Shown piece after piece: positions 882 to 31,744 of a stretch of DNA of 64,000 bases. Source of the DNA: Zygnema circumcarinatum SAG 698-1b (lineage: Eukaryota > Plantae > Zygnematophyceae); the NCBI GenBank assembly GCA_037447605.1, contig CM074804.1, forward strand, positions 7,045,909-7,109,908, read 5' to 3'. A program made the translations under genes and the position numbers. The notes under the pieces were generated by a model, which was not told the origin of the DNA, ran no database searches, and saw nothing but the letters and a program-made list of their open reading frames with translations. Numbering within the stretch: position 1 is the first letter of the stretch; the number at the start of each line of letters is the position of its first letter.

Positions 882-3800
882 CTAACTGACATCCATGAGG
901 TCTGCGCCCACTATGGAGTCGTGCTCCTGCCGGACCTGGTTGTACAGCTGCCCTACAGCGCCCGTCTTCACAACATTGTTCAGGAAGTTGGTGAAGCGCG
1001 ATGAGGACTCCACGTTGCTGCAGAGAGTGCAAAAGGGCAGTTGCAAGGTCGGCGTGCTTAGCGTGAAGGAAGGAAAACCGGCATCGGTGAATGAAGTGCA
1101 GAGGAGAGAATATCAGGTTAAATGACACAACCCACAAGTGGGAAACATACGGCTGCAAAGAGGGCTGTTGGCATGCAGATAGTATGCAAGGCAACATGCC
1201 CTCACCTGATGCGGGTCAACGAATTGATAGCACGTAGCGCACTTCGAATCATGTCGTCGTTCCGATCGAGTTCTTGCTTCACCGCGTCTTGCTTCACTTT
1301 GTTTGCCACAGTCTTCTCCAAAGGCTCCAACAAAGAATCGAGGACTGCATGCGACACCGCGAGCACAGGTCGTCAGGAGTCAGACGCTGTCACTGCTCCG
1401 GTTGACTTTTGCATACAGCGAAGCAATAATCAGAATTTTGACTCTGAACCTTCATGCTCACAGCTACGTTCAACTAACATCCTTGCATGTATCGTTCATG
1501 CCCAGGAGGGTACATGAGTAGGCACAAACCTGCAAGGACGGCTGGCCCGCACTTTTCAGACAGTTTTGACAAAATAAGGTGGCAGGGCATCTTCACATCG
1601 TAGTCATCTGAGAGATGATCCACCCAATGAAAGACGTCACAAAGACGTTGTGTTAAAAAACAAGGGCTACAATAGCAACATCTTCAACGAACAAGCAGCA
1701 GCAAGCACGTGTTTCTTGTAGAAATGGGGCGCTAACGAAGGGAAAAACAAGAAGCTCAAGAGCTAGCAGCAAATCTGTGACTTTGTTTACCTCCAAGTCC
1801 AGAAACAAGGTAGGGAGTGATAAAAGCAGACGGGTCGATTCGATCCAAGCAATTGCTGAGGAGAGTGTCCATGCAGTCGAAGGCTGCTTTCCGAAGCTCG
1901 AGACCATCGTCCACCGTGTGCGTGAAGGGACCCAAGTTCACCGTTCTAATAAGCTCAGGCTGCAAGACCGAAAATTCCCCCATGAGCTCCAAACCTTGTG
2001 GAATTGCAACGACAAGGACGTCGAAGGACATGCGAAGCTCTCTATACTTCATCACCACGCCAAACACTGCCCATCCCAGAACAAGTTTGCCATTCATTTC
2101 TGCGGCTTATCGAGACCCCACAAACCCACTTGCCTTGACTATCATCTGTTGGTAGAGAAGAGGAAGAAGCGCAGGTAGGTGATCGGCGACAAGGCTGGGC
2201 TTATTGTGTGCAGCAGTGCTGAGGGCCACCACTGAAGCGCGTCTGACATGCTGCATGGGAGCAGACAGTTGCAACCACTTGCTAATGTTCTGAGATGCAG
2301 AAGAAAGGGAGGAGTAGAGCAAAGAGCATGCCATTGCGAATTGGGCAGCGGGTCACATCAGTTTTCTATTATCTGATGTGTTGAGACACAAAATGCTAGA
2401 AAATAATGAAATTTTCTAACTCTTATCCGGTTACAAGATCAGGTCGATGATAACAAAGGTCGAATAAGGCGCTTTCAACATGTCAACTCACCCTGTCTTC
2501 ATCCTTGAGCAACAGAAACGAAAGAATTCCCGGCCTTATGTACGCGTCAATTGGCTGGGGCTCATCCACGATGGTAAATTTAAGGGAAAACACCATTGTA
2601 GCGCGCGTGTGAGCAGAAGGGCTAGTAGTTCTCTCCTGCACGTCAACACTCTCGACTTTATGTAAACACAACAGTTAACTGTACCGATGGAACAAGAAAA
2701 ACATGCAAGACAAGACGACTTTCGCCATTTTTCATGCTTGGCTGAATTTATATCAATGAAAACTTGTGGAAGTAGCCGCTTACAAACAAAGGAACGAGTT
2801 TTACATCATCCTGCCTTCATTCCTCTGCAAGCTCCAAAGCTGGAACCAGGTTACGAAACATCCGTACCTGGAGGGCAGGCACTAGCTTGGCTGATTCAAT
2901 AAGGGCCAGCTTGCCGAGACACTCGGCGACAACATTCCGTACACCCTCTTCATCACTTTCGCAGTGCACAAACAGCAGTTGCAGAATCTTCTCCACATCG
3001 GCAGGCTGGAGTTCCACCTTCCTACCATAATCTGCAGACTGCCGAGTAATGACCTGCAGGAAAAAACACACCAATCCTTATGCAACCGCAGGAGCATCAC
3101 TTCACATCACTTCAGGCATGCAGGGCCCATGAGAAGGCCGTACATCACTCTGGGATTTCTCACAAGATCGAATCCCATTACACCCCACCGACAAGATGAA
3201 TGGCAGCAAGAGGAAAAACGTCACAAGAGTGGGCATGACAGACTAACCTCTTTAAGAGAATGAAGGAGTAGGTATTTTAGCTTAGGCTGGCTACCAATCT
3301 GGCTGAGGATGAATGGCAGAAACTTCGAATGACTTCCCACAGCAATGTTCCCCAAAGCGAATGAAGCAGCTCCCTTGATTTCTTCGGATGGCGATTGGAA
3401 CGAGCCAACGACGACATTTTCCAAAGCTGGATGGATACTCAGATCTTTCCTTCGCCCGATTTCTCCCAAACATAGGAGGGACAGCAGTTGTGTCTGTCAC
3501 ACCCAAGAACGGTCGCAAGGAACTCCTGTCCTTTCAGGCCGTACATGATTGGCAGTTTTGGCACAAGTCTCAGAGTCTGTGCCATGCAGGGAAGTAACCC
3601 TCTAGGACAACGCCGGAAATAACAGGCACGACAGTCAGAGTAATATCTGTCTACTTACGGTACATGGGGCAGAAAGAGGCTTTGAATAAGCACGTATCAG
3701 GTAAATTTCCCTTTAAACATAGGATTCCTAGAACTAGGCATTTGCCACCATCGACAATCGTACGAGTAGATTTCCACAAAAACGACAGAGCTGCAAGGGA

Positions 3801-11531: not shown

Positions 11532-14500
11532 ATGGCCTCGTGTGCAATCTCTTGCAGTAGCTTCTGCTCCAAAACAAATGATGCATTTGGCCTTCTGACA
11601 AGTACCAGATGGCAGAATTCTGTCGCAATATGGCAAGCAAGAGGTTGGTCCAGTTACAAGGGGAAGAAACCTGCTGGAGCTCGCGTTGGCCTTTCCAGGA
11701 GCTCTCCTATGCGGAGGAGGAATTACTCGGTTAGGTGTGCTGATTCCGAAGGTCAGCATGATGCGGCTTTGTTCAATAAGCCAGAAGGGCGACATCCAAT
11801 TCGAAGATATTTCGACGATGCACGGTTTGCTCCCTTCCCTCCTCCCTTTTCCTTCCATATTTAGCCATCAGCGGCAGCTTGAAGGGACTTCTTCGATTAT
11901 GTCAAGTCAGTCACTGAAACGTCGTACACGATTATGCTTGTGCGCCATTTTCTGGCACAAGTCAGCTGGAGACATGAGGCAGCTCGCCTGAAGTCTAAGC
12001 CGATTTTCAGAACTTTCACTATAAACAAAAGTTTCACATAGCTATTAGAGAGTCCTAATGAGTTTTTCGGATTGTGTACAAGGATTTTTCCCTTTTGGGT
12101 AAAAAACAACACGATCTCGGAGCTCTCTCTTACAGGGCTGTTGCCATCTTGTTTGATTCATTTCTCCAGAGGCCCTCTGAATAGAATTCTGAGAGATGAA
12201 GTTGGCCGCGATGTTATCGCTTTGGCACTTCCGGCGGCATTGATGGCCATGTCCGATCCTGTGGTTCAATTGACGGAGACTGCCATTGTGTCAAGGATCG
12301 GTACTTTCCTTCCATTCACTAGTCAATGGTCAGATGGTTTGCGTGACGAAAGCAAGAAGAATGCTTCTTCTTGCAACGAATTCTTGGCCTGTAAGGTTAG
12401 CCAACTGGCTATGAACGTACAAAATTGCGAATAACTATTTATCGTAATGGAGGAGGTACAGGCGGTTCAGCTCTTGGCAACTGGAGTACTAGGGAACTCT
12501 TTGTATTGGTGATTAGTGTTGTGAGAAACGAGTTATATGTTGACTTGGTTGGGTCATTGAACTGGGGGTTCCAGCAATGTGTTTGACAGCGATGACTTGG
12601 GCATTCAAGTGGCTGCGATAGCCTGGCCAGCTTTTCTGGCCTTGGCAGCCGACCCGCTTGCGTCCCTCACGGACACATATTTTATCGCTCAAATAGGTAT
12701 TCTTGAAGTGGGAATCCTGAATGCAAGCACTTAACCGGGCCGTGCGTGTTGGTTAATGCTTCTGTTTCCCTGTGCATTCTACAATAGATGCACTATGCAG
12801 GGCAGTGTTCAGAAATTAGCAGATTGGCACCGTTAGCGTTCTGGCCTGTGCTGCTGTTCAGTGACTATGTCGAATGAGGCATATGCCATTGTAGAAACTT
12901 GAGATCAGTCGACTTGAACATCTCACCAAATTTCGGAAAGCAAGCGTGCAGTTTTACTCAAAGAAGGGATAGTTATTTGGCGCCCTTTCAGGTCCCGTTG
13001 AGTTGGCAGCCGTTGGTGTGTCGATCTCAATATTCAATTTGGTCTCGAAAGTGTTCAACTTCCCACTACTCAATGTCACGACTTCATTCGTAGCGGAGGA
13101 CGAGGAGGCAGCTGAAGCTCAACGGAAGCTTGCTCCTGGTATGTTCGCATTAGCTGTGATTTATTCCACTTTGCTGTCCATCCCAACCTATTTTTTGATA
13201 AATGTTCCCTTTCCCAGAAACCGTTTTGCTGGCAGGATCATGGAGGTTGATATCTCTTGGTGAATCGGCTCTGAAATGGATTTCCGCAGATTCATCAGAC
13301 TCAAAATGGTTGCTGCAATATAATGGAGAAGCATTGAACGAACCTTATCTTTTTTTAATCGTGCAAGTTGAATCTAGGTGCTCTTTAAATCCGCAGTTGA
13401 ATTATCTACTGTTCGCGTATAATCGTCATTGTTTGCAGTGGCTGATTTCCATTCCGTAGTGTCGAATCATATGGTACGGTTTGGTACCTTTCACTAAGAT
13501 TACTCTAGCATTTCAAATTGGAAAGCTACAACCTATATTATTGGCTAAAGTGATGAAACCTCATCGTCAGAATGCGAGTGTTGATCTTCCCCCTATTTGT
13601 TATCGGGGAGGTTTTGCTAGTCTCTAGGTTCTCTAGTTTGCGTGCTTCTATTCAAGAGTACTTTTGCAGAACTAACTATTGGGTCGTCGTCTTTTTTGGA
13701 ATGGTGCATGTTTTCTGTGTAACAGGCGATGAAAAACCCTCGAAGCCAGCATTACCTGCAGTATCATCTGCACTTTTGTTGGGGACAATCCTTGGCCTTG
13801 TGGAGGCTGCATTTCTAATTTTTGGAGCTGGCAGCGTACTCGACATTATGGGCGTGCCTCTGGTTTGTTCTTGGCTGATTACACCTCACATAACATGATT
13901 TAATTCGCTGTTCCCTTCTAGCTGGTTGTAGAAATTTTCTATCTTCATTGTAAAGTGTTCCGCTCTCTCGCCCTTACTGTTTCTTTCCCCTCTTCTCTCT
14001 CTCTCTCCCTCTCTCTCTTCTATTAATCCCTTAAAGAATGGAGAAAATGCAATTACTCGGAGTTGACTGAAGTCAGCAGGATAAAATCACTGCCCGAGGA
14101 AGATGTGCTTTATCAAACGAGTGAGCGCTATTGCATTGTTGCTGTTTTATGCAGAATTCAGCGATGAGAGGTCCAGCAACCGAGTACCTTGCATTGCGAG
14201 CTATTGGTGCACCGGCTGTGGTGGTGGCTCTTGCCACCCAGGGTGTGTTTCGAGGGTTCAAAGATACCAAGACACCCCTCTATGCTACAGGTGGTGTACT
14301 TGGCCCAAAGTGGTTCAGTTCAGTACACTCTACAGACACTAGTTGCCATACTGCACATTGTGTAATGGGGACTCCTTTCTGAATTTTGTTGTTTTTGTGC
14401 TCCTATTCATCAGAGAGTATTCATCTGGAAAAACTCCATGCAAAAGCTCACTAGGATTTATGGATCTTGGATCCGCAGTGGGGGCAAACTTGATGAACGT

Positions 14501-17116
14501 CGCTTTGGATCCTCTTTTCATGTTTGGTTTCGGATTTGGTGTAAGCGGCGCAGCGGTAGCTACTGTCATTTCACAGTAAGCTCACTGCAGACTTTTGCTG
14601 GATGGTTTCCTGTATTACATTTTGGAGTCGTGCTGGTTTGCAAGTTGTACTTCTTACATTGACACAGAAGCACCATTGGCCATAGTTCACAAGGATTCTG
14701 TTCTGTCCGAAGCAGCAATTGGGATATACCATAGACCAAACGCGATAGGTCGCTAGCGAAAATGCACAATTGTTTCTTATATCTCTGAATCAGATAGGTA
14801 CACTTTATTGGAAGCACGAAACATATACCAGGATATAGTCCTGCGCATCTTATGGGGTTGACCTATCATGCACATGACTGCAATTCAGATGGTCATTTGA
14901 CGATCGTGGCCCTCACATTCACCAGCCTGCTTGTCCGCTGCATTGAGCATTGACTAGGGCAAGCAAGTCGAAGGCCCTGGCCAAACGAAAAGAAATCAAC
15001 GTTAGAATGAATTGTTTGTGATTCTGTTTTGCGTCAATGTCAAGCGCATATGCCTGTATGGATGGACAGGTATCTGATGGCAGGGGTACTACTTTGGAAT
15101 CTCCGAAAGCGTGTAACTCTGATCCCGCCTCGCTTTGAGGATCTACGCATTGAGCGTTTTCTAAAATCCGGTAAGTTAGTATATGGAGAAGCGGGGTATC
15201 TGACGCGATGTCGGAGGCCAATGCTTGCTTTGTGTTAAAGAGGCTTGACTGCATAGCGGTCCCACATGCTGTTGCAATATCGAGCAACTCAGAGAAGTTG
15301 TGTATTGAAACCGATGAATTGTGGTCTCTTGCTATCCTCTATTTTAGAGGTATTTTGAAACTTGCCATGTATCTCCTTCCAGGTGGTCTTCTCCTTGGGC
15401 GAACACTCGCACTGTTGAGCACCATGACTCTCGCAACATCCATGGCAGCACGTCAAGGAAGCACGGCCATGGCTGCGCATCAAGTCTGCCTTCAGATATG
15501 GCTGGCCGCATCTTTGCTTAGTGACTCTATCGCTCTTGCTGGCCAAGTAAGTGAATATTCTGAAACACCGATTAAGTTATGAGTTATGATCTCACCAGCA
15601 TGGCTAGCTTCATGAACCTTGCAAATTTGTAGCCTTCATTTTTTTATGAAGGTAGCTAATTTGTTTATGTTCACTCAAGTGTAGGGTATAATTACTCAAA
15701 ATATGTTTGCAAACACTACTTTATGTGGGCACTTGTTGATCATGCTCTTACCTTCTGACATTATGGAGATTGTGTTCTGTGAACAGACTCTGCTAGCAAG
15801 TGCTTTTGCGAAGGGGGATTACGTGCGTGCGAAGGAGATTATGTATAGAATTTTGCAGGTTGGTCTACCTGACCTTTGTGATGCCATGAATGTGCTAGAA
15901 ACGGATTCGCAATGCCAATTTGAATGGCAAATTGCCGTGAGTGAGTCATGTATTTGTTTATACCCCGTGTCCATGGTGAGTACTTGTTTGCATATTAAAC
16001 AGCCTTTCGATCGTCAACCACGTTTCCTTGCAAATTGAGTAGCTGACGGCGCACTTTGCTGTGAATGCTGAACTAAAGATCTATTCCTACTGTTATGCAG
16101 CTTGGCCTTGCCATGGGATTGCTTATGGCAACTCTGCTGTCTCTGGGAGCGGGCATCATTCCACGAATCTTTTCAGACGACCCCGGAGTTCTTGATGCCA
16201 TGGTTGTCATCTTTCCGGTCAGACTTGCATCCTTACCGCTCCTCCTCTCTAAATCAAATTGATTTGGCTTTATGTATACAGGAGTGTGCATCTGCCCTCT
16301 TTGGCTGCATGAGTTCGAGCAGCAGACACTTTGCATCTCCATAGCTGTCCTTGGATTATTCTTAAGGTAGCATTTTTTACCCCGCTCGCTTCGCAGGCCG
16401 TACTGTTGCGTGTTTGGCTCAATCTATTTGCGGCTTTGGCCAGCCAACCGTTGCGATTACTTTATTCTCGGTGGATATGGATCTCTTGTCCATTCTGAGC
16501 TACCCTACTCTTTCTCTTACATGTATGGCGTTGTGGTGGTCCAGTTCGTAGCTGCCACACAGCCCATCACTTCTATGGCGTTTGTATTCGACGGTATCCT
16601 CTACGGGGCATCAGACTTTGGATATGCAGCAACCGCGATGGTAAAGCCTCTGTCAGAAACTCTTCCTACATCTTGTAAGGTGGGGAGTCACGGCTGTTCT
16701 CTTCTTGTTGGTTCTTTCCCGTGCAAATCGCTCAATATACCGCGGGAGGGTTGCAGATAGTGCTCGTTATACCTGTTGTTGGTGTGCTACTAGTCGCGCC
16801 CAAGTTCGTTGGCGTGGGAGGAGTTTGGATGGGCCTCACATTGATCATGAGTGCACGAATGTTTGCTGGTTTTGCCCGGTAAGCAGTTTGACTCCATCTT
16901 CAAACCGCTTTTTCATAACTGTGAGCACTGTAAGTTTGCCGCGGTTGCTTTCTCCTGAGGGGGATGGGATCCGTGGGGACAATTGATGTCACAGGGTGGG
17001 AACTGCGAGTGGACCATGGCATGTGCTGCGCATAAAGCCGACCCCGAGGATGGAAGACCGGGGAAGCTCATGAGAGTGAGAGTCAGTCGGGCTGCGCGCC
17101 TGCTCAAGAATTATAG
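11532..17116 (+). CDS. MATE efflux transporter, DinF-like/FRD3-DTX42-45 class, with predicted plastid transit peptide (multi-exon)
   Basis: Exon 1 (11532-11824) is Ser/Arg-rich with a VRC-A motif. Later exons give GPVELAAVGVSISIFNLVSKVFNFPLLNVTTSFVAED, YLALRAIGAPAVVVALATQGVFRGFKDTKTPLYAT, NVALDPLFMF, AAHQVCLQIWLAASLLSDSIALAGQ, FVAATQPITSMAFVFDGILYGASDF, GVWMGL and RVGTASGPW, with TAG at 17114-17116. Confidence 0.92.
12170..12300 (+). CDS. MATE TM1 exon, variant A (candidate mutually exclusive exon)
   Basis: Acceptor catttctccag|a, donor atcg|gtactt, 131 nt, phase 2 to phase 1. Encodes GPLNRILRDEVGRDVIALALPAALMAMSDPVVQLTETAIVSRIG. Confidence 0.7.
12590..12696 (+). CDS. MATE TM1 exon, variant B (canonical-looking; candidate mutually exclusive exon)
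   Basis: Acceptor gtttgacag|c, donor atag|gtattc, 107 nt, phase 2 to phase 1. Encodes DDLGIQVAAIAWPAFLALAADPLASLTDTYFIAQIG. Confidence 0.85.
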
Positions 17117-17695: not shown

Positions 17696-20600
17696 TCAGG
17701 AGAGAACAACGTCACTCTTCGTTTGCCTCAACGTCGCTGACCCATCAAGAACGGACGACACGAACTGCTCAACGTTCTCCATGTTGAACGGCCCGTCATA
17801 AACTGCAAACCTCTTGCGTTTTGGTTTGTATGCCAAAATGACCACCTGTCCTTTGGCCGGTGGCTTGACACCCGCAAACGCTCCAAGGAATGATTTTTGT
17901 TTGGACAAATCCACCATGCTGTACGACACTGCTGACGTGCTTCCAGCAACTCTTCTCAGAAGCGATTTCTGAGATACCTGACCATAGACATTCAGGACGA
18001 AGCGAGCATCCGATCAGGATACAAGGGGTCAAAGCATCAAAGCATTTCACCTGTCCCTTCATTTGTGAGTACTAATCCTTCTCGGTTCAAATTGACATAT
18101 CAAACAGTCTGCCGATGGTCCAACTAAACAAAGAACAATAGGTGGCATATAAATCAGAAATCGTATTAACCGCAGAGAGGTTTGAGGCACTCACCTCGAG
18201 GAGTACCTTCGCGGCTTCATCAGATGTCTTGGCTGATGCGACAGCAAATATAACACATAGAGGAGTATCTGAACCACAGAGGTGACTCTGAGTAGCTTTT
18301 GAAAGCATAGAAACTCCCAATGGGCCCGCAGCTTTGCCCTTGCGTTCCAATACCTCCAACCATGCGTGTAGCGACTCTAAGCTCGTCTTGCCTGTGAACC
18401 GCATCTCCTCTCCGCTAGGCAGCACGCCCACCACGGAGGGTGCGGCTGTCACTCCAAACTTCTGTGCAAGTACGTGGTCTGCAGGCTGATCCGGCACCTG
18501 CACCAATCATGACCACACCCCTCCACCCTCAGAAGTAGCAACTGGCATAAAGTAAAGAGCACCATAACCTGAGAATTAAGATTGTAAGGACGCTTGTCAT
18601 TGCCAGAGATTCGTTCTAAATCTTAGAACCATGTACGTACTGCCTAGTTCTATAGGTTGAAAAGACTGCAGGGGGTAGGGGAGGGGGAGGGGGAGGGCAG
18701 TCACTCGGCCAATACATTAAAATGTTGAAAACCCACCTGTACTTCAAAAAGCTTCACGCGTTCCTTGAAGGCTTCGCTCAAGGAGCGCCAAACGGTAGGT
18801 GTAGCGGGCTTGTTCGTGAAAAGTATGGCTCTGGGCGACTCCGCCGCTTGCGCGAAGCGCTTTTCAAAGTTAGACGGATTTAACTTAACAGAATGATTTG
18901 GCAATTGGGACAGACACCAACTGATTATAGCTGTTTTGGAGATACGGCCCTTGTAGGAGAGAGGCTTCGCTTTGGCTGGAATTCCCCACGGGAACAGAGA
19001 TGCAGAAACCTTTCCAGAGGCATGTTTTGCACATAGACTTTGTTCCTCCTGGCAGTTCACGACTCCAATCTGTAAATGCGAAAAGCGCCAAAAAGAAGTT
19101 GTATTAATCAGGTCAGCTGAATCACAGACATGTTCACAGTTGCTAATTTCGTTTAACGGACTGAGAAAACCAGCCACTGATACAATATCCCACGGCACTA
19201 GTCAGAGTGTACTATTGAAGTTTACATAAGAAGAGCATTCCAGGCAAAACTATGATTCCAACCATTGCGATTTACCTTCAGAAGACCCTTCAGCTCCTTC
19301 AGCGCCTCCTCCACCTCAGCCCTAGCTGCAGCAGCCTCCGAATGCGTGAGATCAACGAAAAAGACCAGCCACGGCTCCACTACTTTCAGCACCTTCTCCT
19401 TGAAGCTCGAATGGCTTAACGTTTCCAACCCCTTCAAATTTCTCCAAACGCCAGCAGTGCCGTCCTGATGTGTAGAACCCGCTTGATGACCATCTCCAAA
19501 GCCTTCGAATATATTCTGGAAAAACCCGCGATCTCTTCCACCCTCGCTACTTTGACCAAAATTGAATTGAAACTGCTTACTACCACCAAAGAAGGACTCG
19601 AATGGGATCTCCTCTGGTCCTGCTCCCCCACTTGAATGCTGGTGAAAAGTGAAGTGTCTGCCATCACCTCCTTGTCTGTGAAAACCCCCCGAACCTCCAA
19701 AAGGGTCGGGCCCACCATTGCCAGCACCCTTCATACCTTCCTCTCCATACATATCATACTGTTTCCTCTTCTCCTCATCTGAAAGAATATCGTATGCTGC
19801 AAGTATATAGGCAGCAAAAAATCCAGCAATCAAGAGATCATTGCTCTCGAACTTTTTAAGCCAGAGCGCGCAATCCTACTCCTCATCTAGGACACGTTTT
19901 CAAGCCTCGTAAGCAGCTCAGACCACCATTGGAGATTATTAGGCAGTGCTGAAGCACACAGAGTGAGAAGGCGATAAAGAAACGTAGAGTGTTTTCACCA
20001 ACATGTTTTGTTTCAAGCAAAAAACACCTACCAAATGTAAACGCCACATAATGGAGCCATGCAGTAGCACACAATCTGAGAGGAAAATTCTTCTCTCAAC
20101 TTGATATCCTTCCAAGTAACATGAGTACGAGGTCATATACTTACCATTTGAGATTTCCTGGAATTTGGATTCAGCGCTCTTAGATGGGTTTTTATCAGGG
20201 TGATATTTCATGGATAATCTGCACATGATTGTGAGAAAATCCTTCAGCAAGCCATCACCTGGAAGGCGGTCCGTCGATGACTACCGTTTCAACATTTTCA
20301 TTTTCCATTTTATTTTAAAAATTACTGTTTTCCTCTCCGCAATGAACAGAGGAAGAGAGCCATGCGGTAAACTGAACACATACTTGTGGAAGGCTTTTTT
20401 TATTTCACGATCACTGGCGCTCTTATCCACGCCGAGAATCTGCATCCGCCCATATGATACACCGTAACAAGCCAAAAAAAACCAACAATAGCTTGATAAA
20501 GCACTCGAATAGCACAGAAAAGACACCAGTTAATGGGACGGCAATCCAGGAAGAAAAGGCTCACTGCTTCAGCAATACCCGCTCACATCCATTCCAGCAG

Positions 20601-26427: not shown

Positions 26428-29400
26428 CTACGTTCGAGGAACCAAAACGGGGTAATGGTGTACTTGTCGAATTCTCGACTTCACTTCATTCTTCAGAAGA
26501 AGGTATGTAACGAGCCGATATCCCACAAGCATGCAGAGCAGTATAACTGCCTCCACTGCCCCTCCGCCACTTATTCCGTCCAAATGCCACCGCAGTTCTG
26601 GATTGTCCTCATACCGGCACTGCTGCGTGACATGCGTAGTGCCCTGTGGTCCTGCCATAAGGACCTGACAGGCATATGTACCATCCTTTGCAAAGTTTAC
26701 TCGCAGAAGGAGCTGCAAAACAAACAGAATACAGGGCCAGACTGGTGTTTGAGAACAGCTCTGGGCTCAATACCCAGAAACCCACTCAAAAAAACGTCAC
26801 CCACTTATTGAGCACCTTAAAATGAAACAAAAAACTTCATGCACGAAGCAAGAGGTCAGCACAAGGAACTAACGCACTTGGACTATCTGGGCCTAATATT
26901 CATCATTGGAAGACAGCCATTGATAGAATAAGGGAATCTTAAGAGGGCGAAAGGAAGACAGGCTGCATACCCTATGAATATACGTCGAAAAGGAGAGATA
27001 CTTGATCCAGCCGACCCATGAGGGTGCATTCAATACAAGAAAATCAACCACCATAAGGGAAAGCAATTGCAACAGCGTTGCGATAAAAATGGCTTGCTTG
27101 GCGGTTCTCGCGGCTGCACCGACTGCAAGTCCGACTGAGGAGGCCACCATGCAGTCCAAAACCAAAATAATTTCAAATAAGATAAATCGGCCAAAGTTGG
27201 AATTCAAGCCAGCCATCCAATACACAATGGCTCCGAACAGCAGGGGGAATAGAACCTCGTAAGGCAGGTAAAGAATGATTCTTGAGGTAAAATATGCACT
27301 TATATGGTATGTTCCTCCATCTTGCTCTTGGCGAAGGAGTGATCGGTCCTGCGTAAGATACACGAATCGTCAGACTTACATGGCAAGTCTTTATGCTGAA
27401 CATATAAAATCTGGAAATGCTTCGAACATGCGAAGAAACGTTACTTTCACAATTTTGAACTTTAACACAGCTCAGGGTATTTACAATTAAGAACAGAATC
27501 TCACACACTGACGAAAACTAGTCCGCAGCATGAACCCATATCCAAATCCCCGAGCTCAAGTTTATGTCCATTTATTGAATGTCATCCCCAAACGTTCACC
27601 TTCATAGGTGCTACTATTAGCAAGCAACATGATATGGATGTAAAATGAATCACATCAATTATCCCCTTTCAGCTTGTTCTGCGAAGTGAGGGAAGAATGG
27701 TGGCGAGTGCTTCCAAAGTGGGCTGACATGCCTTACTTTAGCAGCCCGGGAAAAAAAGGGAAAAGCAACGATTATCTCTATTGCAACAACAGTACAACAA
27801 CTGAAACTATGCGGATGAAGGCACCTGGAAAAATGTGAGAACGGTGGAAATCATGGGAAATAGGCCCCAAAATAGGCCAACGAAGAAAATCAGTCCAGAT
27901 TGATCTCGCACTCCATCTGCTGTTTCAGAACGCTGATACCACAAACAGCCTGTGCCCACACCCATTCCTCCACATCACAAGGTGTTCCCGCACACCGAAC
28001 CACCGCAATTTGCAGCAAACAACTCTGCATCATCACTCCCCAAATAATCGTTGTACGTTGTACCTGCAATAAGCGCACACAACACAACCGTTCCGAATAC
28101 AGACACGGCTCCCATGTCCCAAATTCTGTAGCCCTTCCCATTGCGGCGGAGAAGGACTCGGCATTGGTGCAACCATGTGGTCACCCAACGGCTATCTTTG
28201 GCACCATCCTTTGAGATGTCATCCACAACGACCTCCTCAAGCTGCCCCACATGGTCATCTTTCCAGGGGACACGCTCAGGTTGGCCCGGCACGGGCAGGC
28301 CTGTAAGGGTGGACCCCTCGCGGTTTCGCCATGCATATATCAAATTTGTGGTCGTTCCATAGTGAATTGAAGCATCAGAAGGCTCCGCCACTGCAAGATC
28401 CTGCAAGAAGAGTTCGCAAAAAGTCCAAATAGTTGCAAAGGATGTCGTCATTCACTGTGCTATTCACTCTTTGTAACATTTGCCAAAGAAAGCTTTGTGG
28501 TTTAATGGAAAAGAAAAAGGATGTTATCTTCGGATCCACAATCAAGCATTCACAATCATCCGAAGATGCAATACAAGCATTTGCAGAAACCGTGTTTGAG
28601 GAGGAGGGAAATGAGCCACCAGAAGGTACTCGGCCGGACTGATGTTGGGACTTGGTCGATGCCCAAGGCTTTCAAAGTACGCCATGGCCTCATCCGCAGG
28701 TCCATTGTAGATGGGGTTTCCTTCAGCCAACAGCAGAAGGGTTGAGAAAAGCTCAAACATTCGCGCACTTGGCATCTTGTAACTGGCAATAACTGTGCGC
28801 CCTGCTGCTGCATACGCCGCGAGCATGCGGGTCATTCGTAGAGACATGGCACCGTCCAATCTGCGAGACAATGGGATGTCAGACATCTCGCATCTTCTGC
28901 AGCATGGAATGCATGCAATTACCTCACTTCTGGTGGGAGTGAAGGGAGCATCGTGACAGAGGGTATACAGAGTCGCTCACCCTGACGTAGGCTCATCCAA
29001 CAAGAGCAGCGAAGGATTCGTTATCATCTCCAGACCAATTGCAAGCCTCCTCCTCTCATTGTTCAGCACTCCTCCTGCCTTGCCGACCATCGTATCCGCA
29101 CACCTGCAAGCAAGCACCCGCAGATGACTCAATTTGTCAGCAGGAAAATAATCTGCATGGCCAGAAACAACGTTGAACTAAAGGCGATACAATTTAATGT
29201 CAAAGTATATGTGAAATTTGCAAAAGCATTTGCGAAATAAACCTATTCAGAGCAAACCATTGAATCGATAAGAATCACTCCACTCCTCACGGCAGTGCAA
29301 AGGTATATACGATCCAAGCAAACCTGCAGTAATGGGCTCACAGAATTGGACGGCCAAACATAATCCACATAGGAAAAAAACAACAAATCACTATGGCTGC

Positions 29401-31744
29401 CCTTGACGGAAACACAGCGCATAACAACCATAACTTCAGCACATTTCATTGGGAGCACATAGTCAGATGGGCAAACATGGGCAACTCTTTGCCATTATAC
29501 CTTTCCAAAAACCAATATCACGCCTCTCCTTTCCATCCTCTTCTTTATAATTAAATCCTGGAGTGACGTGCTAGGCTAAGTTCACATTAGCCCATTAGCA
29601 CATGCAGGGAAAGGACGGTACTGGGTGAGCTCCAAGGAGTCGAGAACATGCTCCACTCGAACAACTCGGTCAATATCTTCAGTGTCCTGAGGAAGCCTCA
29701 GCTGCGCGGCAAACATTAAACTCTCCTTCACCTGCCAATACATCAACTCGAGCAAAACTCGTTAAAGACTGGAAGACAAGGCAGTCAAAAAAGGGTGGAT
29801 GAACTGCCAATCCTAAAATTGCCAAAATGGGCAATAACCGATGCTTATGAAGGTGCAACTCAGGACTAACTTTTTTGCTAAACGATCGCAACTTTCAAGA
29901 GAAGAGGTACACAGTACCCTATGGAAAAAAAGGCACCTAAGATTGATTTTGTGTGAGTCAAAATACAGGGACGTGGAATATGTACAAAAGCGATTAAGAA
30001 ACGAAAGAATAAATTAATAATAAAAAACATTCACGTGATAAAACATCGGTTTTCGGTCCTCGATTCTCGGTGAAAAAAGAGCTCACTGTGAGGTTCTCAA
30101 GAAGGTGCGCCACAGGTTCGACAAACCCAATATTTCGGCGCATCCAATTCGCAAAGAGATGTCCATTGTATTTGACTTCACCTTGCAGCCGTGACGAATC
30201 CCGAAGCCGGCCTGCTATTATACGAAGCAAGAGAGACTTCCCTGAACCCTCGGGCCTGCGATGCAGCTCATCAACAGCAGTTAATACCATCATACAAAGA
30301 TAGATGCAGAGAATGGGAGGACTGCACAGTCAACTGACCTTCACTTTCATATTAAGGGAAGTCTCAGTTGCTTGACTAAACCATCACCTCTACGAGAGTG
30401 TCCAATTATTTGGCAAAAAGTCCTTCACAGGTCTGGTTCAACATGTTAAGCGCACAGGAAAAAATGAAAGTCACTTTCTATGCAGCCGAATAATGCTTAA
30501 GAGTTCGTGATTGGGTCACGTAGTTGGGGAATGCTGGAGACGGAACCTCACCCGAGTACCGCCATCAGCTGGCCGGGCTCAACTTTACCATTCACATTGA
30601 ACAGTACCTTCTTGTCCTGCATTGCATCCTTTTTCTGCCACCACCTGTAAAAAACCTGCACCTCTCTCCGCTAACAGTTAATGAATGCGCAATTCAATTT
30701 AACCTCCTTAAAAAGGCCATTTTGAGGCCACGGAATAGGGTGGTAAATTTAGAATATATATATATCTCTCTATGCATATATGTTATGCAACTTTCGGGAT
30801 AGCAGCATGAACCGGTCGGATGACCAGCTCAGCCGCCAATCCGCACTCAAGGAGACATCCTCCCAATAGAGGGACGATTACTTCTCGCAATGTTCCTGCT
30901 TTTTTTAGCATAATGCCCAGCACTCATCGGCAATCGATGATCCAAGTTCTGTTGTCTTACTTCCCGGAGTTAACCAGCTTCCTTCGGCAAGCTTAAAAGC
31001 TCCTCGTATCAAACTAGACCTGAATAAAAGTGATTCACTTGCGTGCAGCAGACAACTAACACCAAAACCATTTGAAATTTGCGAAAAAAGATGATTAAAT
31101 GACACATATATTAAGTGCAGCAAATGACTGGCACGAACACCATATAAACTTTGAGCAAACGAGACGGTTAACTGACACTTGGCGTACGTGCAGAAGACGA
31201 CTGGCGCAAAACCCATACAAAATTTGAGCAAAAAAACGGTTGAATAACTACGTGCAGCAGACAACTAGCACAAAAAATATATGAACTTTGGGCCAAAAAA
31301 TGATTAAATGATACCTTATGTGAAGCAGACAACTTGCACAAAGTCCATATAAAATTTGAGCAAAAAGACGGCTAACTGACACCAGAAAACGGGCACAATG
31401 CCAATACACGATGGGCATTCACCCTCCCATGCCAATATTCGCACCCGTATAAAGGTTCAAGTATCTTTAAAAAATCTTCAAACTAACCTCCGGTTTCTGG
31501 ATGTTACCTTTGGATGAAGTTCCACAGAGTAGTCCAGCCCGCGCCATTCCACCTTAATCCCCTGGGGAAGAAGTTTGCTCTGCGAGTCAGTTTCCGCCAG
31601 TGCTGTAGCGGCCGCAATAACTCTCCTGTCCCGCCGCTCTCCCTGTGTGGGCAGAGTGCTTCTGCGGGGCCCATCCTCCTGCAAGCCGTCGGAAAGAGCC
31701 GCCATGTGGTCGGCAGGCGACGCCGCCTTCTGCTCGACCGCCAT
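26428..31744 (-). CDS. ABCG (WBC) half-transporter, ABCG14/22/26-like topology, with degenerate nucleotide-binding domain
   Basis: MAVEQK...[12 protein letters not shown]|...[19 protein letters not shown]|PEGSGKS (Walker A)...|[14 protein letters not shown]|CADTMVG...[10 protein letters not shown]|LD...[16 protein letters not shown]|...[17 protein letters not shown]|[20 protein letters not shown]...[10 protein letters not shown]|...YRLVTYLLL. The 3' end is uncertain because a possible donor lies after SRIRQ. Confidence 0.88.
31043..31385. repeat. Degenerate minisatellite, about 5 units of 64-73 bp, in ABCG intron 1
   Basis: Units start at about 31043, 31115, 31188, 31252 and 31320 with gtgcagcagacaact-like heads, a ccatataaaatttgagcaaaaa-like core and ends of atgattaaatgac or acggttaactgac. 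Confidence 0.75.

What the first reader, a model, noticed from the sequence alone, without database searches (positions are those of the whole stretch)
12170..12696. Duplicated, frame-locked TM1 exons in a MATE transporter: candidate mutually exclusive exons or alternative N-termini
Seen: two homologous exons lie between exon 1 (ends 11824, phase 2) and exon 3 (starts 12992, phase 1). They align without gaps over 36 aa with 15 identities (DEVGRDVIALALPAALMAMSDPVVQLTETAIVSRIG vs DDLGIQVAAIAWPAFLALAADPLASLTDTYFIAQIG). Both are open, have AG/GT sites and share the same phases. Including both creates a stop at 12619-12621, and skipping both creates a stop at 12999-13001, so only one-or-the-other transcripts are coding. 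Seen: a possible separate first exon, ATG 12447 to donor 12508 (MEEVQAVQLLATGVLGNSLY, phase 2, 81-nt intron), could feed exon B without the transit peptide. Established: mutually exclusive exons are rare in plants, and the TM1 Asp of DinF-type MATEs (Asp41 in PfMATE) binds the coupling cation. Inference: exon A carries Glu where B carries Asp in the LTD/ET motif, so one gene could make transporters differing in coupling, substrate or compartment (plastid vs non-plastid).
Basis: partly seen in the sequence, partly recalled or inferred. Interest (0 to 1): 0.85.

Follow-up and report, generated by a model that had tools for sequence, protein, structure and literature searches.

The report
Ancient alternative TM1 exons in MATE
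A transporter gene of this streptophyte alga carries two copies of the exon for its first membrane helix, the helix that binds the driving proton; only one copy can be used per protein, and the same pair is found in liverworts and a moss, so it is a very old and rare plant-lineage case of mutually exclusive exons.

Summary
Exon A (12170-12300, 131 nt) and exon B are homologous TM1 exons of a 13-exon DinF-type MATE gene (11532-17073). RNA joints move exon B's start from 12590 to 12575 (122 nt). Both lengths are 2 mod 3, so only one-or-the-other transcripts stay open.

RNA contigs from three studies show joints exon1>A, exon1>B, B>exon3 and exon1>exon3. The joint A>exon3 was not listed, and the A-B intron is often retained.

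The strongest evidence is comparative:
- The same A-B-exon3 arrangement occurs in a related alga's transcript, in Marchantia (131/122 nt), in Calypogeia, and in Sphagnum, where A is frameshifted.
- Marchantia's public annotation already holds two isoforms that differ only in this block.
- A TM1-only tree splits all A-type from all B-type helices (100/94).
- Trees of the rest of the protein follow taxonomy and reject A-type monophyly (AU p=7e-6).

This implies an ancestral two-exon gene that was repeatedly resolved into A-only (DTX45-like) and B-only (DTX42/43/44-like) genes.

Exon B has Asp at the PfMATE D41 / HvAACT1 D99 proton site, and exon A has Glu. The alternative-N-terminus idea (ATG 12447) has no support. 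I found no paper describing this. Verdict: genuine ancient mutually exclusive exons, with B the major form; productive A use in this species is not directly shown.

The parts
11532..11824 (+). Exon 1: start codon plus a 97-residue Ser/Arg-rich presequence with few acidic residues (transit-peptide-like); ends in phase 2
   Evidence: translation; its donor is used in four different joints; composition. Targeting was not tested.
12170..12300 (+). Exon A, alternative TM1 exon (131 nt); A-type helix ...LPAALMAMSDPVVQLTETAIVSRIG, with Glu at the proton-site position
   Evidence: Joint 11824>12170 in runs X1 and X2. Groups with A-type TM1s at 100/94. Coding-type conservation against a relative. Same 131 nt as Marchantia exon A.
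12301..12574 (+). Intron between A and B (274 nt); frequently retained in RNA contigs; in-frame stop at 12432-12434
   Evidence: Unbroken contigs 12271-12603 (X1), 12169-12603 (X2) and 12273-12602 (X3); stop position. The same intron is retained in a relative's otherwise spliced mRNA, L004.
12575..12696 (+). Exon B, alternative TM1 exon (122 nt, corrected start); B-type helix NVFDSDDLGIQVAAIAWPAFLALAADPLASLTDTYFIAQIG, with Asp at the proton site
   Evidence: Joints 11824>12575 (X1, X2) and 12696>12992 (X1). Matches HvAACT1 TM1 at E=4e-8. The 122 nt length is conserved in Marchantia, Calypogeia and L004.
12992..13138 (+). Exon 3 (end of TM1 through TM2, PVELAAVGVSISIFNLVSKVFNFPLLNVTTSFVAEDE), the shared acceptor for A or B
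   Evidence: Joints; 88-92% identical peptide in all related loci.
13726..17073 (+). Exons 4-13 of the MATE gene: 13726-13862, 14155-14290, 14479-14575, 15070-15170, 15383-15546, 15787-15858, 16101-16217, 16545-16640, 16757-16878 and 16995-17073 (includes the stop)
   Evidence: All introns are GT..AG and are seen as joints in RNA contigs. The assembled ORF is 560 aa (B) or 563 aa (A). It is 67% identical to MatE proteins P0155 and P0170.

Best explanation
This is a real, very old pair of mutually exclusive exons in a DinF-type MATE transporter of the FRD3/HvAACT1/DTX42-45 family. Exon 1 is spliced to either exon A or exon B, and that exon is then spliced to exon 3. Both exons are 2 mod 3 in length, so transcripts with both, with neither, or with the A-B intron retained hit early stop codons and make no transporter. 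Exclusivity at the protein level is therefore enforced by reading frame, presumably with nonsense-mediated decay removing the rest (inferred). The swapped segment is TM1, which in HvAACT1 carries both TM1 proton-site aspartates (D92, D99) and the two bending prolines. Exon B gives the citrate-exporter type helix (..ADP...SLTDT..). Exon A gives the DTX45 type helix (..SDP...QLTET..), with Glu instead of Asp at the PfMATE D41 position. One gene can thus make two transporters that most likely differ in proton coupling, pH dependence or substrate (inferred). B looks like the major form and A the minor one. The pair predates the split of zygnematophyte algae and land plants. In several lineages it was later resolved by gene duplication followed by loss of A in one copy and B in the other.
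For: Shown here:
- Exon homology and frame lock.
- RNA joints 1>A in 2 runs from 2 studies, 1>B in 2 runs, and B>3.
- Contig starts at 12271 and 12273 lie one k-1 overlap before the A donor, which implies a branch there in X1 and X3; 12273 fits A>exon3, because the intron and exon 3 both begin GT (my inference).
- The same A-B-exon3 arrangement in L004, Marchantia L005 (131/122 nt), Calypogeia L003 (146/122 nt) and Sphagnum L008.
- Marchantia isoforms P0167 and P0294 are identical over 197 N-terminal and 452 C-terminal residues and differ only in the B versus A block.
- Codon-position identity of exon A between two algae is 0.49/0.69/0.28, a coding signature. Between the two liverworts the A-B intron is at shuffle level while exon A is above it.
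- The TM1-only tree splits A from B in one branch, 100/94.
- The body tree follows taxonomy, and A-type monophyly is rejected at p=7e-6.
- Asp/Glu position mapped to DinF-BH D40 and PfMATE D41; role of D99, D92, P84 and P93 from PMC12358922.
Against: - The joint 12300>12992 was not among the 15 joints listed; 3 more were not shown.
- Rough depth bookkeeping in X1 suggests most exon-A transcripts go on to retain the A-B intron or include B, both non-productive.
- In X2 a contig runs unbroken across the A donor.
- Exon A evolves 3-10 times faster than exon B in every tandem gene (branch lengths). It has lost the Asp-Pro motif in liverworts and is frameshifted in Sphagnum.
- Two region-restricted protein searches found no further A-isoform proteins.
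- All RNA evidence comes from assembled contigs, which drop rare variants and cannot give ratios.
Confidence: 0.7

Rival explanations
1. In this species exon A is no longer a coding alternative but a poison or decaying exon. Choosing the A acceptor yields only non-productive RNAs (A plus retained intron, or A plus B), which lower output of the B transporter. The protein-like conservation would then be a leftover from an ancestral mutually exclusive pair.
For: A-B intron contigs have depths similar to exon A, and no A>exon3 joint was listed. An A-plus-retained-intron mRNA is also the assembled form in the relative L004. Exon A sits on long branches and is decaying in Sphagnum.
Against: Window exon A keeps an open frame, both prolines, the Asp-Pro motif and QLTETA. 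Third-codon positions are saturated against L004 while second positions are 69% identical, so selection acted on the peptide in both algal lines. Marchantia annotates a clean 1-A-3 isoform. Contig breaks at 12271 and 12273 indicate that the A donor is used.
Confidence: 0.2
2. Exon B is fed by a separate promoter and first exon inside the A-B intron (ATG 12447, donor 12508, acceptor 12590), giving a transporter without the presequence.
For: The model is open when spliced as proposed.
Against: No 12508>12590 joint was listed, and contigs run unbroken across 12447-12603 in three runs. The acceptor actually used is 12575. If unspliced, the ORF stops after 21 codons. No relative shows such an exon.
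Confidence: 0.03
3. On the evolutionary inference only: A-only and B-only genes are two ancient paralogue families whose bodies were homogenised within each lineage by gene conversion, or exon A entered B-type genes by exon transfer. On this view there was no ancestral two-exon gene repeatedly resolved by duplication and reciprocal loss.
For: Discordance between a TM1 tree and a body tree can in principle arise from conversion that spares one exon. Sphagnum exon A is close to the TM1 of the Sphagnum A-only gene.
Against: It needs independent conversion over about 440 columns in at least four lineages, between genes on different contigs (Closterium L001 versus L006/L007). It does not explain tandem genes with identical exon lengths (131/122) in an alga and in Marchantia. 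Within the TM1 tree both exon types contain matching zygnematophyte subclades (98/92 and 98/89), as expected for vertical descent of both exons.
Confidence: 0.12

Closest known systems
Marchantia polymorpha MARPO_0056s0043, 'MATE family, citrate exporter', isoforms PTQ37570.1 (P0167) and PTQ37568.1 (P0294)
   Same: Homologous gene in the same family clade, in the tree's liverwort branch. It has the same order of exon A, short intron, exon B and exon 3, and the same exon lengths (131 and 122 nt). The two annotated proteins differ only in the TM1 block.
   Different: Liverwort exon A has lost the Asp-Pro motif (AAETG), and its intron is 109 nt against 274 nt here. I found no paper discussing these isoforms.
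HvAACT1 / FRD3 / AtMATE citrate-exporting DinF-type plant MATEs (PDB 9l7l; PMC12358922)
   Same: A homologue 67% identical to the window protein (P0170) aligns end to end at E=1.7e-119. Exon B reproduces the TM1 motif with P84, D92-P93 and D99. The Lys of TM2 (FNLVSKV) and the Arg residues of TM7 and TM12 appear conserved in the alignment.
   Different: The angiosperm genes shown here have a single TM1 type (proteins only, no loci checked). The window protein has Asn where HvAACT1 has D289. Substrate was not tested, and the window protein carries a long presequence.
DTX44 (B-type TM1) and DTX45 (A-type TM1), 'chloroplastic' MATEs of seed plants
   Same: Their TM1 helices are the same two types as exon B and exon A. 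Their bodies are sister groups at 100/100, as expected if they descend from one two-exon gene.
   Different: They are separate genes with one TM1 each. No vestigial partner exon was looked for, because no seed-plant locus was fetched.
Classical mutually exclusive homologous exons from tandem exon duplication in animal channels and carriers (for example CACNA1C exons 8/8a; prediction criteria in PMC3228551 and PMC3923563)
   Same: Adjacent homologous exons of similar length and identical phase that encode one transmembrane segment. Inclusion of both or neither breaks the frame.
   Different: This is the plant lineage, where such cases are rarely reported (PMC3923563). No competing RNA structure was found. 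Splicing looks leaky, with skipping and intron retention.

Membership tests
MATE transporters (Pfam MatE PF01554), DinF-like plant clade DTX42-45 | MatE domains over the whole protein, in two lobes | tested here: met
   The spliced 560-aa product is 67% identical to P0155 and P0170, which hit MatE at 7e-32 and 1e-29. One window exon alone scores 23.5 bits against a cutoff of 24.9. P0170 aligns to HvAACT1 residues 8-456. The spliced window protein itself could not be submitted by reference.
MATE transporters (Pfam MatE PF01554), DinF-like plant clade DTX42-45 | Closest solved structures belong to the DinF subfamily rather than NorM or eukaryotic-type MATEs | tested here: met
   Ranking: HvAACT1, then DinF-BH (4lz6, 5c6o), then PfMATE (3vvn), ahead of NorM and human MATE1.
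MATE transporters (Pfam MatE PF01554), DinF-like plant clade DTX42-45 | TM1 acidic proton-site residue (PfMATE D41 / DinF-BH D40 / HvAACT1 D99) paired with a TM5 Asp | tested here: met
   The Asp of SLTDT (P0170; identical in window exon B) aligns to D40 and D41 (5c6n has the D40N change at that column). Exon A has Glu there. The TM5 motif ALDP is present in the window protein, aligned to HvAACT1 LDP (D296).
Mutually exclusive exon cluster | Neighbouring exons that are homologous, of similar length and of identical splice phase | tested here: met
   Lengths 131 and 122 nt, both 2 mod 3, with AG/GT sites. Alignment score is about 12 SD above shuffles.
Mutually exclusive exon cluster | Each exon is joined to the upstream constitutive exon in RNA | tested here: met
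   Joints 11824>12170 and 11824>12575, each in runs X1 and X2 from different studies.
Mutually exclusive exon cluster | Each exon is joined directly to the downstream constitutive exon, so mature mRNAs carry exactly one | tested here: inconclusive
   B>exon3 was seen (X1). A>exon3 was not among the listed joints; 3 joints were not shown. Contig starts at 12271 and 12273 imply a branch at the A donor. The orthologous Marchantia isoform P0294 does join A straight to exon 3. Skip-both joints and A-B intron retention also occur.
Mutually exclusive exon cluster | Both alternatives conserved across species | tested here: met
   The pair is present in L004, Marchantia, Calypogeia and Sphagnum (A frameshifted in Sphagnum). 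It was checked and is absent in Riccia, in one Physcomitrium paralogue and in both Closterium genes.

The most novel reading that the evidence does not exclude
The A/B TM1 exon pair is ancestral to the whole streptophyte DTX42-45 MATE family and has been kept as mutually exclusive exons since before land plants arose. The separate A-only and B-only genes of desmids, mosses, lycophytes, ferns and seed plants (including DTX44 versus DTX45) each arose by independent gene duplication followed by reciprocal loss of one exon. That would make it one of the oldest alternative-splicing events known in the plant lineage, and a repeated natural experiment in trading alternative splicing for gene duplication at the proton-coupling helix of a transporter.
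Probability: 0.55. Interest if true: 0.85.

Novelty: new member of a known kind. Interest (0 to 1): 0.72.

Why it matters
Conserved mutually exclusive exons are rarely documented in the plant lineage. This pair swaps the helix that holds the proton-binding residues and bending prolines of a citrate-exporter-type MATE, so it offers a natural Asp-versus-Glu experiment on coupling. Its distribution indicates that well-known land-plant paralogues such as DTX44 and DTX45 are resolved splice isoforms of one ancestral gene. That can be tested directly in Marchantia, where both isoforms are already annotated. It also shows that automatic annotations mishandle the locus: Calypogeia P0158 and Marchantia P0166 contain both helices in one protein.

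Tried and rejected
- A search for short protein fragments carrying window exon A and for further proteins carrying Marchantia exon A found nothing beyond the query. The second search missed P0294 only because that protein lies inside a 90% cluster.
- Look-ups of the loci for P0167, P0177 and P0197 failed, so no lycophyte locus could be checked.
- An inverted and direct repeat scan of 11800-13000 for docking/selector RNA pairing gave only 10-11 nt chance-level matches.
- Steric exclusion was rejected because the A-B intron is 274 nt. U2/U12 incompatibility was rejected because all sites are GT-AG.
- Chance similarity was rejected by the shuffle test. A dead duplicate was rejected by the codon-position pattern and by conservation across phyla.
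- Run X7 held none of the stretch.
- The spliced window protein could not be passed to structure prediction or whole-protein searches without typing it, so no fold of either isoform was made.

Full report
**Observation.** Every coordinate in the finding reproduces.
- Exon 1 is 11532-11824 and ends in phase 2.
- Exon A is 12170-12300, and exon 3 starts at 12992.
- Both one-exon transcripts are open.
- Including both exons stops at 12619-12621, and skipping both stops at 12999-13001.
- The two peptides align with a score of 71 against 20.8 +/- 4.2 for 2000 shuffles.
- Only 52 of 120 nucleotides agree, and of 16 identical residues just 4 use the same codon. The duplication is therefore old, and the shared residues have been held by selection on the protein.

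**Transcripts.** Three public runs of the same organism, from three studies, turned out to be spliced RNA kept as assembled contigs. They define a 13-exon gene ending at 17073, encoding 560 aa with exon B or 563 aa with exon A.

Joints seen at the alternative region:

| Joint | Meaning | Depth by run |
|---|---|---|
| 11824>12170 | exon 1 to A | X1 48, X2 12 |
| 11824>12575 | exon 1 to B | X1 21, X2 63 |
| 12696>12992 | B to exon 3 | X1 67 |
| 11824>12992 | both skipped | X1 27, X3 44 |

- The acceptor of exon B is therefore 12575, not 12590. This adds NVFDS and matches the HvAACT1 N-terminus of TM1 and a relative's mRNA.
- A joint from the exon A donor was not among the 15 listed; three more were not shown.
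- Contigs run unbroken from exon A through the 274-nt intron into exon B in all three runs.
- In X1 and X3 these contigs begin at 12271 and 12273, one k-1 overlap before 12300 and 12302. That is what a branch at the A donor would produce. The value 12273 fits A>exon3, because both the intron and exon 3 start with GT. This is my inference, not a listed joint.
- Rough depth bookkeeping in X1 suggests most exon-A transcripts are non-productive.

**Family.** A 54-residue exon found plant MATE proteins.
- The spliced protein is 67% identical to P0155 and P0170, which carry MatE domains.
- P0170 aligns end to end with the barley citrate exporter HvAACT1, and then with DinF-BH and PfMATE.
- In those alignments the Asp of exon B's SLTDT lies on DinF-BH D40 (entry 5c6n carries N there) and on PfMATE D41.
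- The HvAACT1 paper (PMC12358922) places D92, P93, D99 (= D41) and P84 in TM1 and shows that D92A, D99A and P93A lower citrate efflux.
- Exon B keeps all four residues. Exon A keeps both prolines and the Asp-Pro motif but has Glu at D99.

**Relatives.** Across streptophytes TM1 comes in two types.
- The B type is LALAADP(L/I)ASLVDTAF, found in DTX42/43/44, HvAACT1 and bryophyte 'citrate exporters'.
- The A type is ..P.AQL(M/T)ETA(Y/F), found in DTX45, Closterium and others.
- Exon A is A-type and exon B is B-type.

Genomic loci and transcripts carrying the tandem arrangement of A, a short intron, B and exon 3:

| Source | Exon A | Exon B | Note |
|---|---|---|---|
| Window gene | 131 nt | 122 nt | intron 274 nt |
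| L004 (RNA contig of the closest relative) | present | 122 nt | exon 1 + A + retained intron + B + rest |
| Marchantia L005 | 131 nt | 122 nt | intron 109 nt |
| Calypogeia L003 | 146 nt | 122 nt | |
| Sphagnum L008 | present | present | A has a 1-nt frameshift |

- All measured exon lengths are 2 mod 3 (L004's A by frame logic), and the donor context G|GTA is conserved.
- Riccia, one Physcomitrium paralogue and the Closterium B-type gene have only B. The Closterium A-type gene has only A.
- Marchantia's public annotation lists two isoforms of one gene, P0167 (688 aa) and P0294 (691 aa). They are identical over 197 N-terminal and 452 C-terminal residues and differ only in the B versus A block, with A joined straight to exon 3.
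- Two other automatic annotations (P0158, P0166) wrongly string both helices into one protein.

**Selection on exon A.**
- Between the window and L004, identity by codon position is 0.49/0.69/0.28 for exon A and 0.71/0.88/0.38 for exon B.
- Between the two liverworts the A-B intron is no more alike than shuffles, while exon A is.
- Exon A has therefore been kept as coding sequence, but under weaker constraint than B. Its branches are 3-10 times longer, it lost the Asp-Pro motif in liverworts, and it is broken in Sphagnum, which also has a separate A-only gene.

**History.**
- A tree of TM1 alone puts all A-type helices, including every tandem-gene exon A, on one side of a branch supported 100/94. 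Matching zygnematophyte subclades appear on both sides.
- A tree of the rest of the protein follows taxonomy instead. A zygnematophyte clade (100/100) holds the window gene, L004's gene, Spirogloea, and both the B-only and A-only Closterium genes as sisters (98/93).
- A moss clade (100/98) holds the Sphagnum tandem, A-only and B-only genes. Seed-plant DTX44 (B) and DTX45 (A) are sisters (100/100).
- Forcing A-type genes into one clade costs 225.6 log-likelihood units (AU p=7e-6).
- The simplest reading is an ancestral two-exon gene, older than the alga-land plant split, resolved several times by duplication and reciprocal exon loss. Lineage-wise gene conversion sparing TM1 is the rival.
- Caveat: several 'B-only' labels rest on proteins alone. 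Only Riccia, Physcomitrium (one paralogue) and Closterium were checked at the DNA level.
- The placement of the window gene also supports other agents' notes that this genome is a streptophyte alga.

**Mechanism.**
- Shown: two alternative acceptors are used from one donor, there is a frame lock, and leaky products exist.
- Inferred: decay of the out-of-frame products, B as the major form, and a functional difference in proton coupling or substrate from Asp versus Glu and the surrounding helix.
- Not supported: a promoter or first exon at 12447. Also not supported is a targeting switch, since both isoforms share exon 1.
- No docking or selector RNA pairing was found.

**Literature.** Searches for mutually exclusive exons with MATE, FRD3, DTX44/45, Marchantia or the Marchantia locus tag found no description. 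The Kassiopeia paper notes that such reports are rare for Arabidopsis.

**Verdict.** This is a genuine, deeply conserved mutually exclusive TM1 exon pair. It is a new member of a known kind, with an unusually informative evolutionary pattern. Productive use of exon A in this species still needs raw-read confirmation.

Noticed in passing
window 11824>15070 (joint in run X3): Exon 1 is also spliced directly to exon 7, skipping exons A/B and 3-6, at depth 60. The product is in frame (347 aa): the presequence plus only the C-lobe (TM7-12), a possible half-transporter or splicing noise.
   Followed up: partly
L008 about 3640-3763 (Sphagnum troendelagicum): The A-type exon of the Sphagnum tandem gene has a 1-nt frameshift: HDVLREITVL in one frame, then SIPAVIAQAIDPVAQLLETAYIGHIG in another. 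Sphagnum also has separate A-only genes (P0183, P0189). This looks like reciprocal exon loss caught in progress.
   Followed up: partly
L001 6624-6677 and 7074-7142 (Closterium A-type gene): Decayed partial copies of the TM1 exon (LRRVSPKGFAGEVIKLAL) and of exon 3 (VSLAAVGVSISVV-IQFNIFNFRL) lie in the introns next to the intact exons, so further local exon duplication has occurred at this spot.
   Followed up: no
P0158 (Calypogeia fissa) and P0166 (Marchantia polymorpha, GCA_001641455.1): Public gene models splice both TM1 exons into one protein by shifting a splice site, giving a MATE with two consecutive TM1 helices. This is a likely annotation error caused by the exon pair.
   Followed up: yes
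window 11848-11858 and 12305-12315: The 11-mer TTTCCTTCCAT occurs just downstream of the donors of exon 1 and of exon A. It could be a shared intronic splicing element or chance.
   Followed up: no
L008 1-1553 (minus strand) versus window 28776-30121: In Sphagnum the MATE gene's immediate neighbour is an ABCG-type half-transporter (ABC_tran plus ABC2_membrane). Another note on this window reports an ABCG half-transporter about 12 kb downstream of the MATE gene. Possible old linkage, not examined.
   Followed up: no
window about 17700-20300, minus strand: The next gene downstream appears to encode a DnaJ-type J domain (…DILSDEEKRKQYDMYGEEG…) followed by thioredoxin-like segments, judged from ORF translations only.
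   Followed up: no
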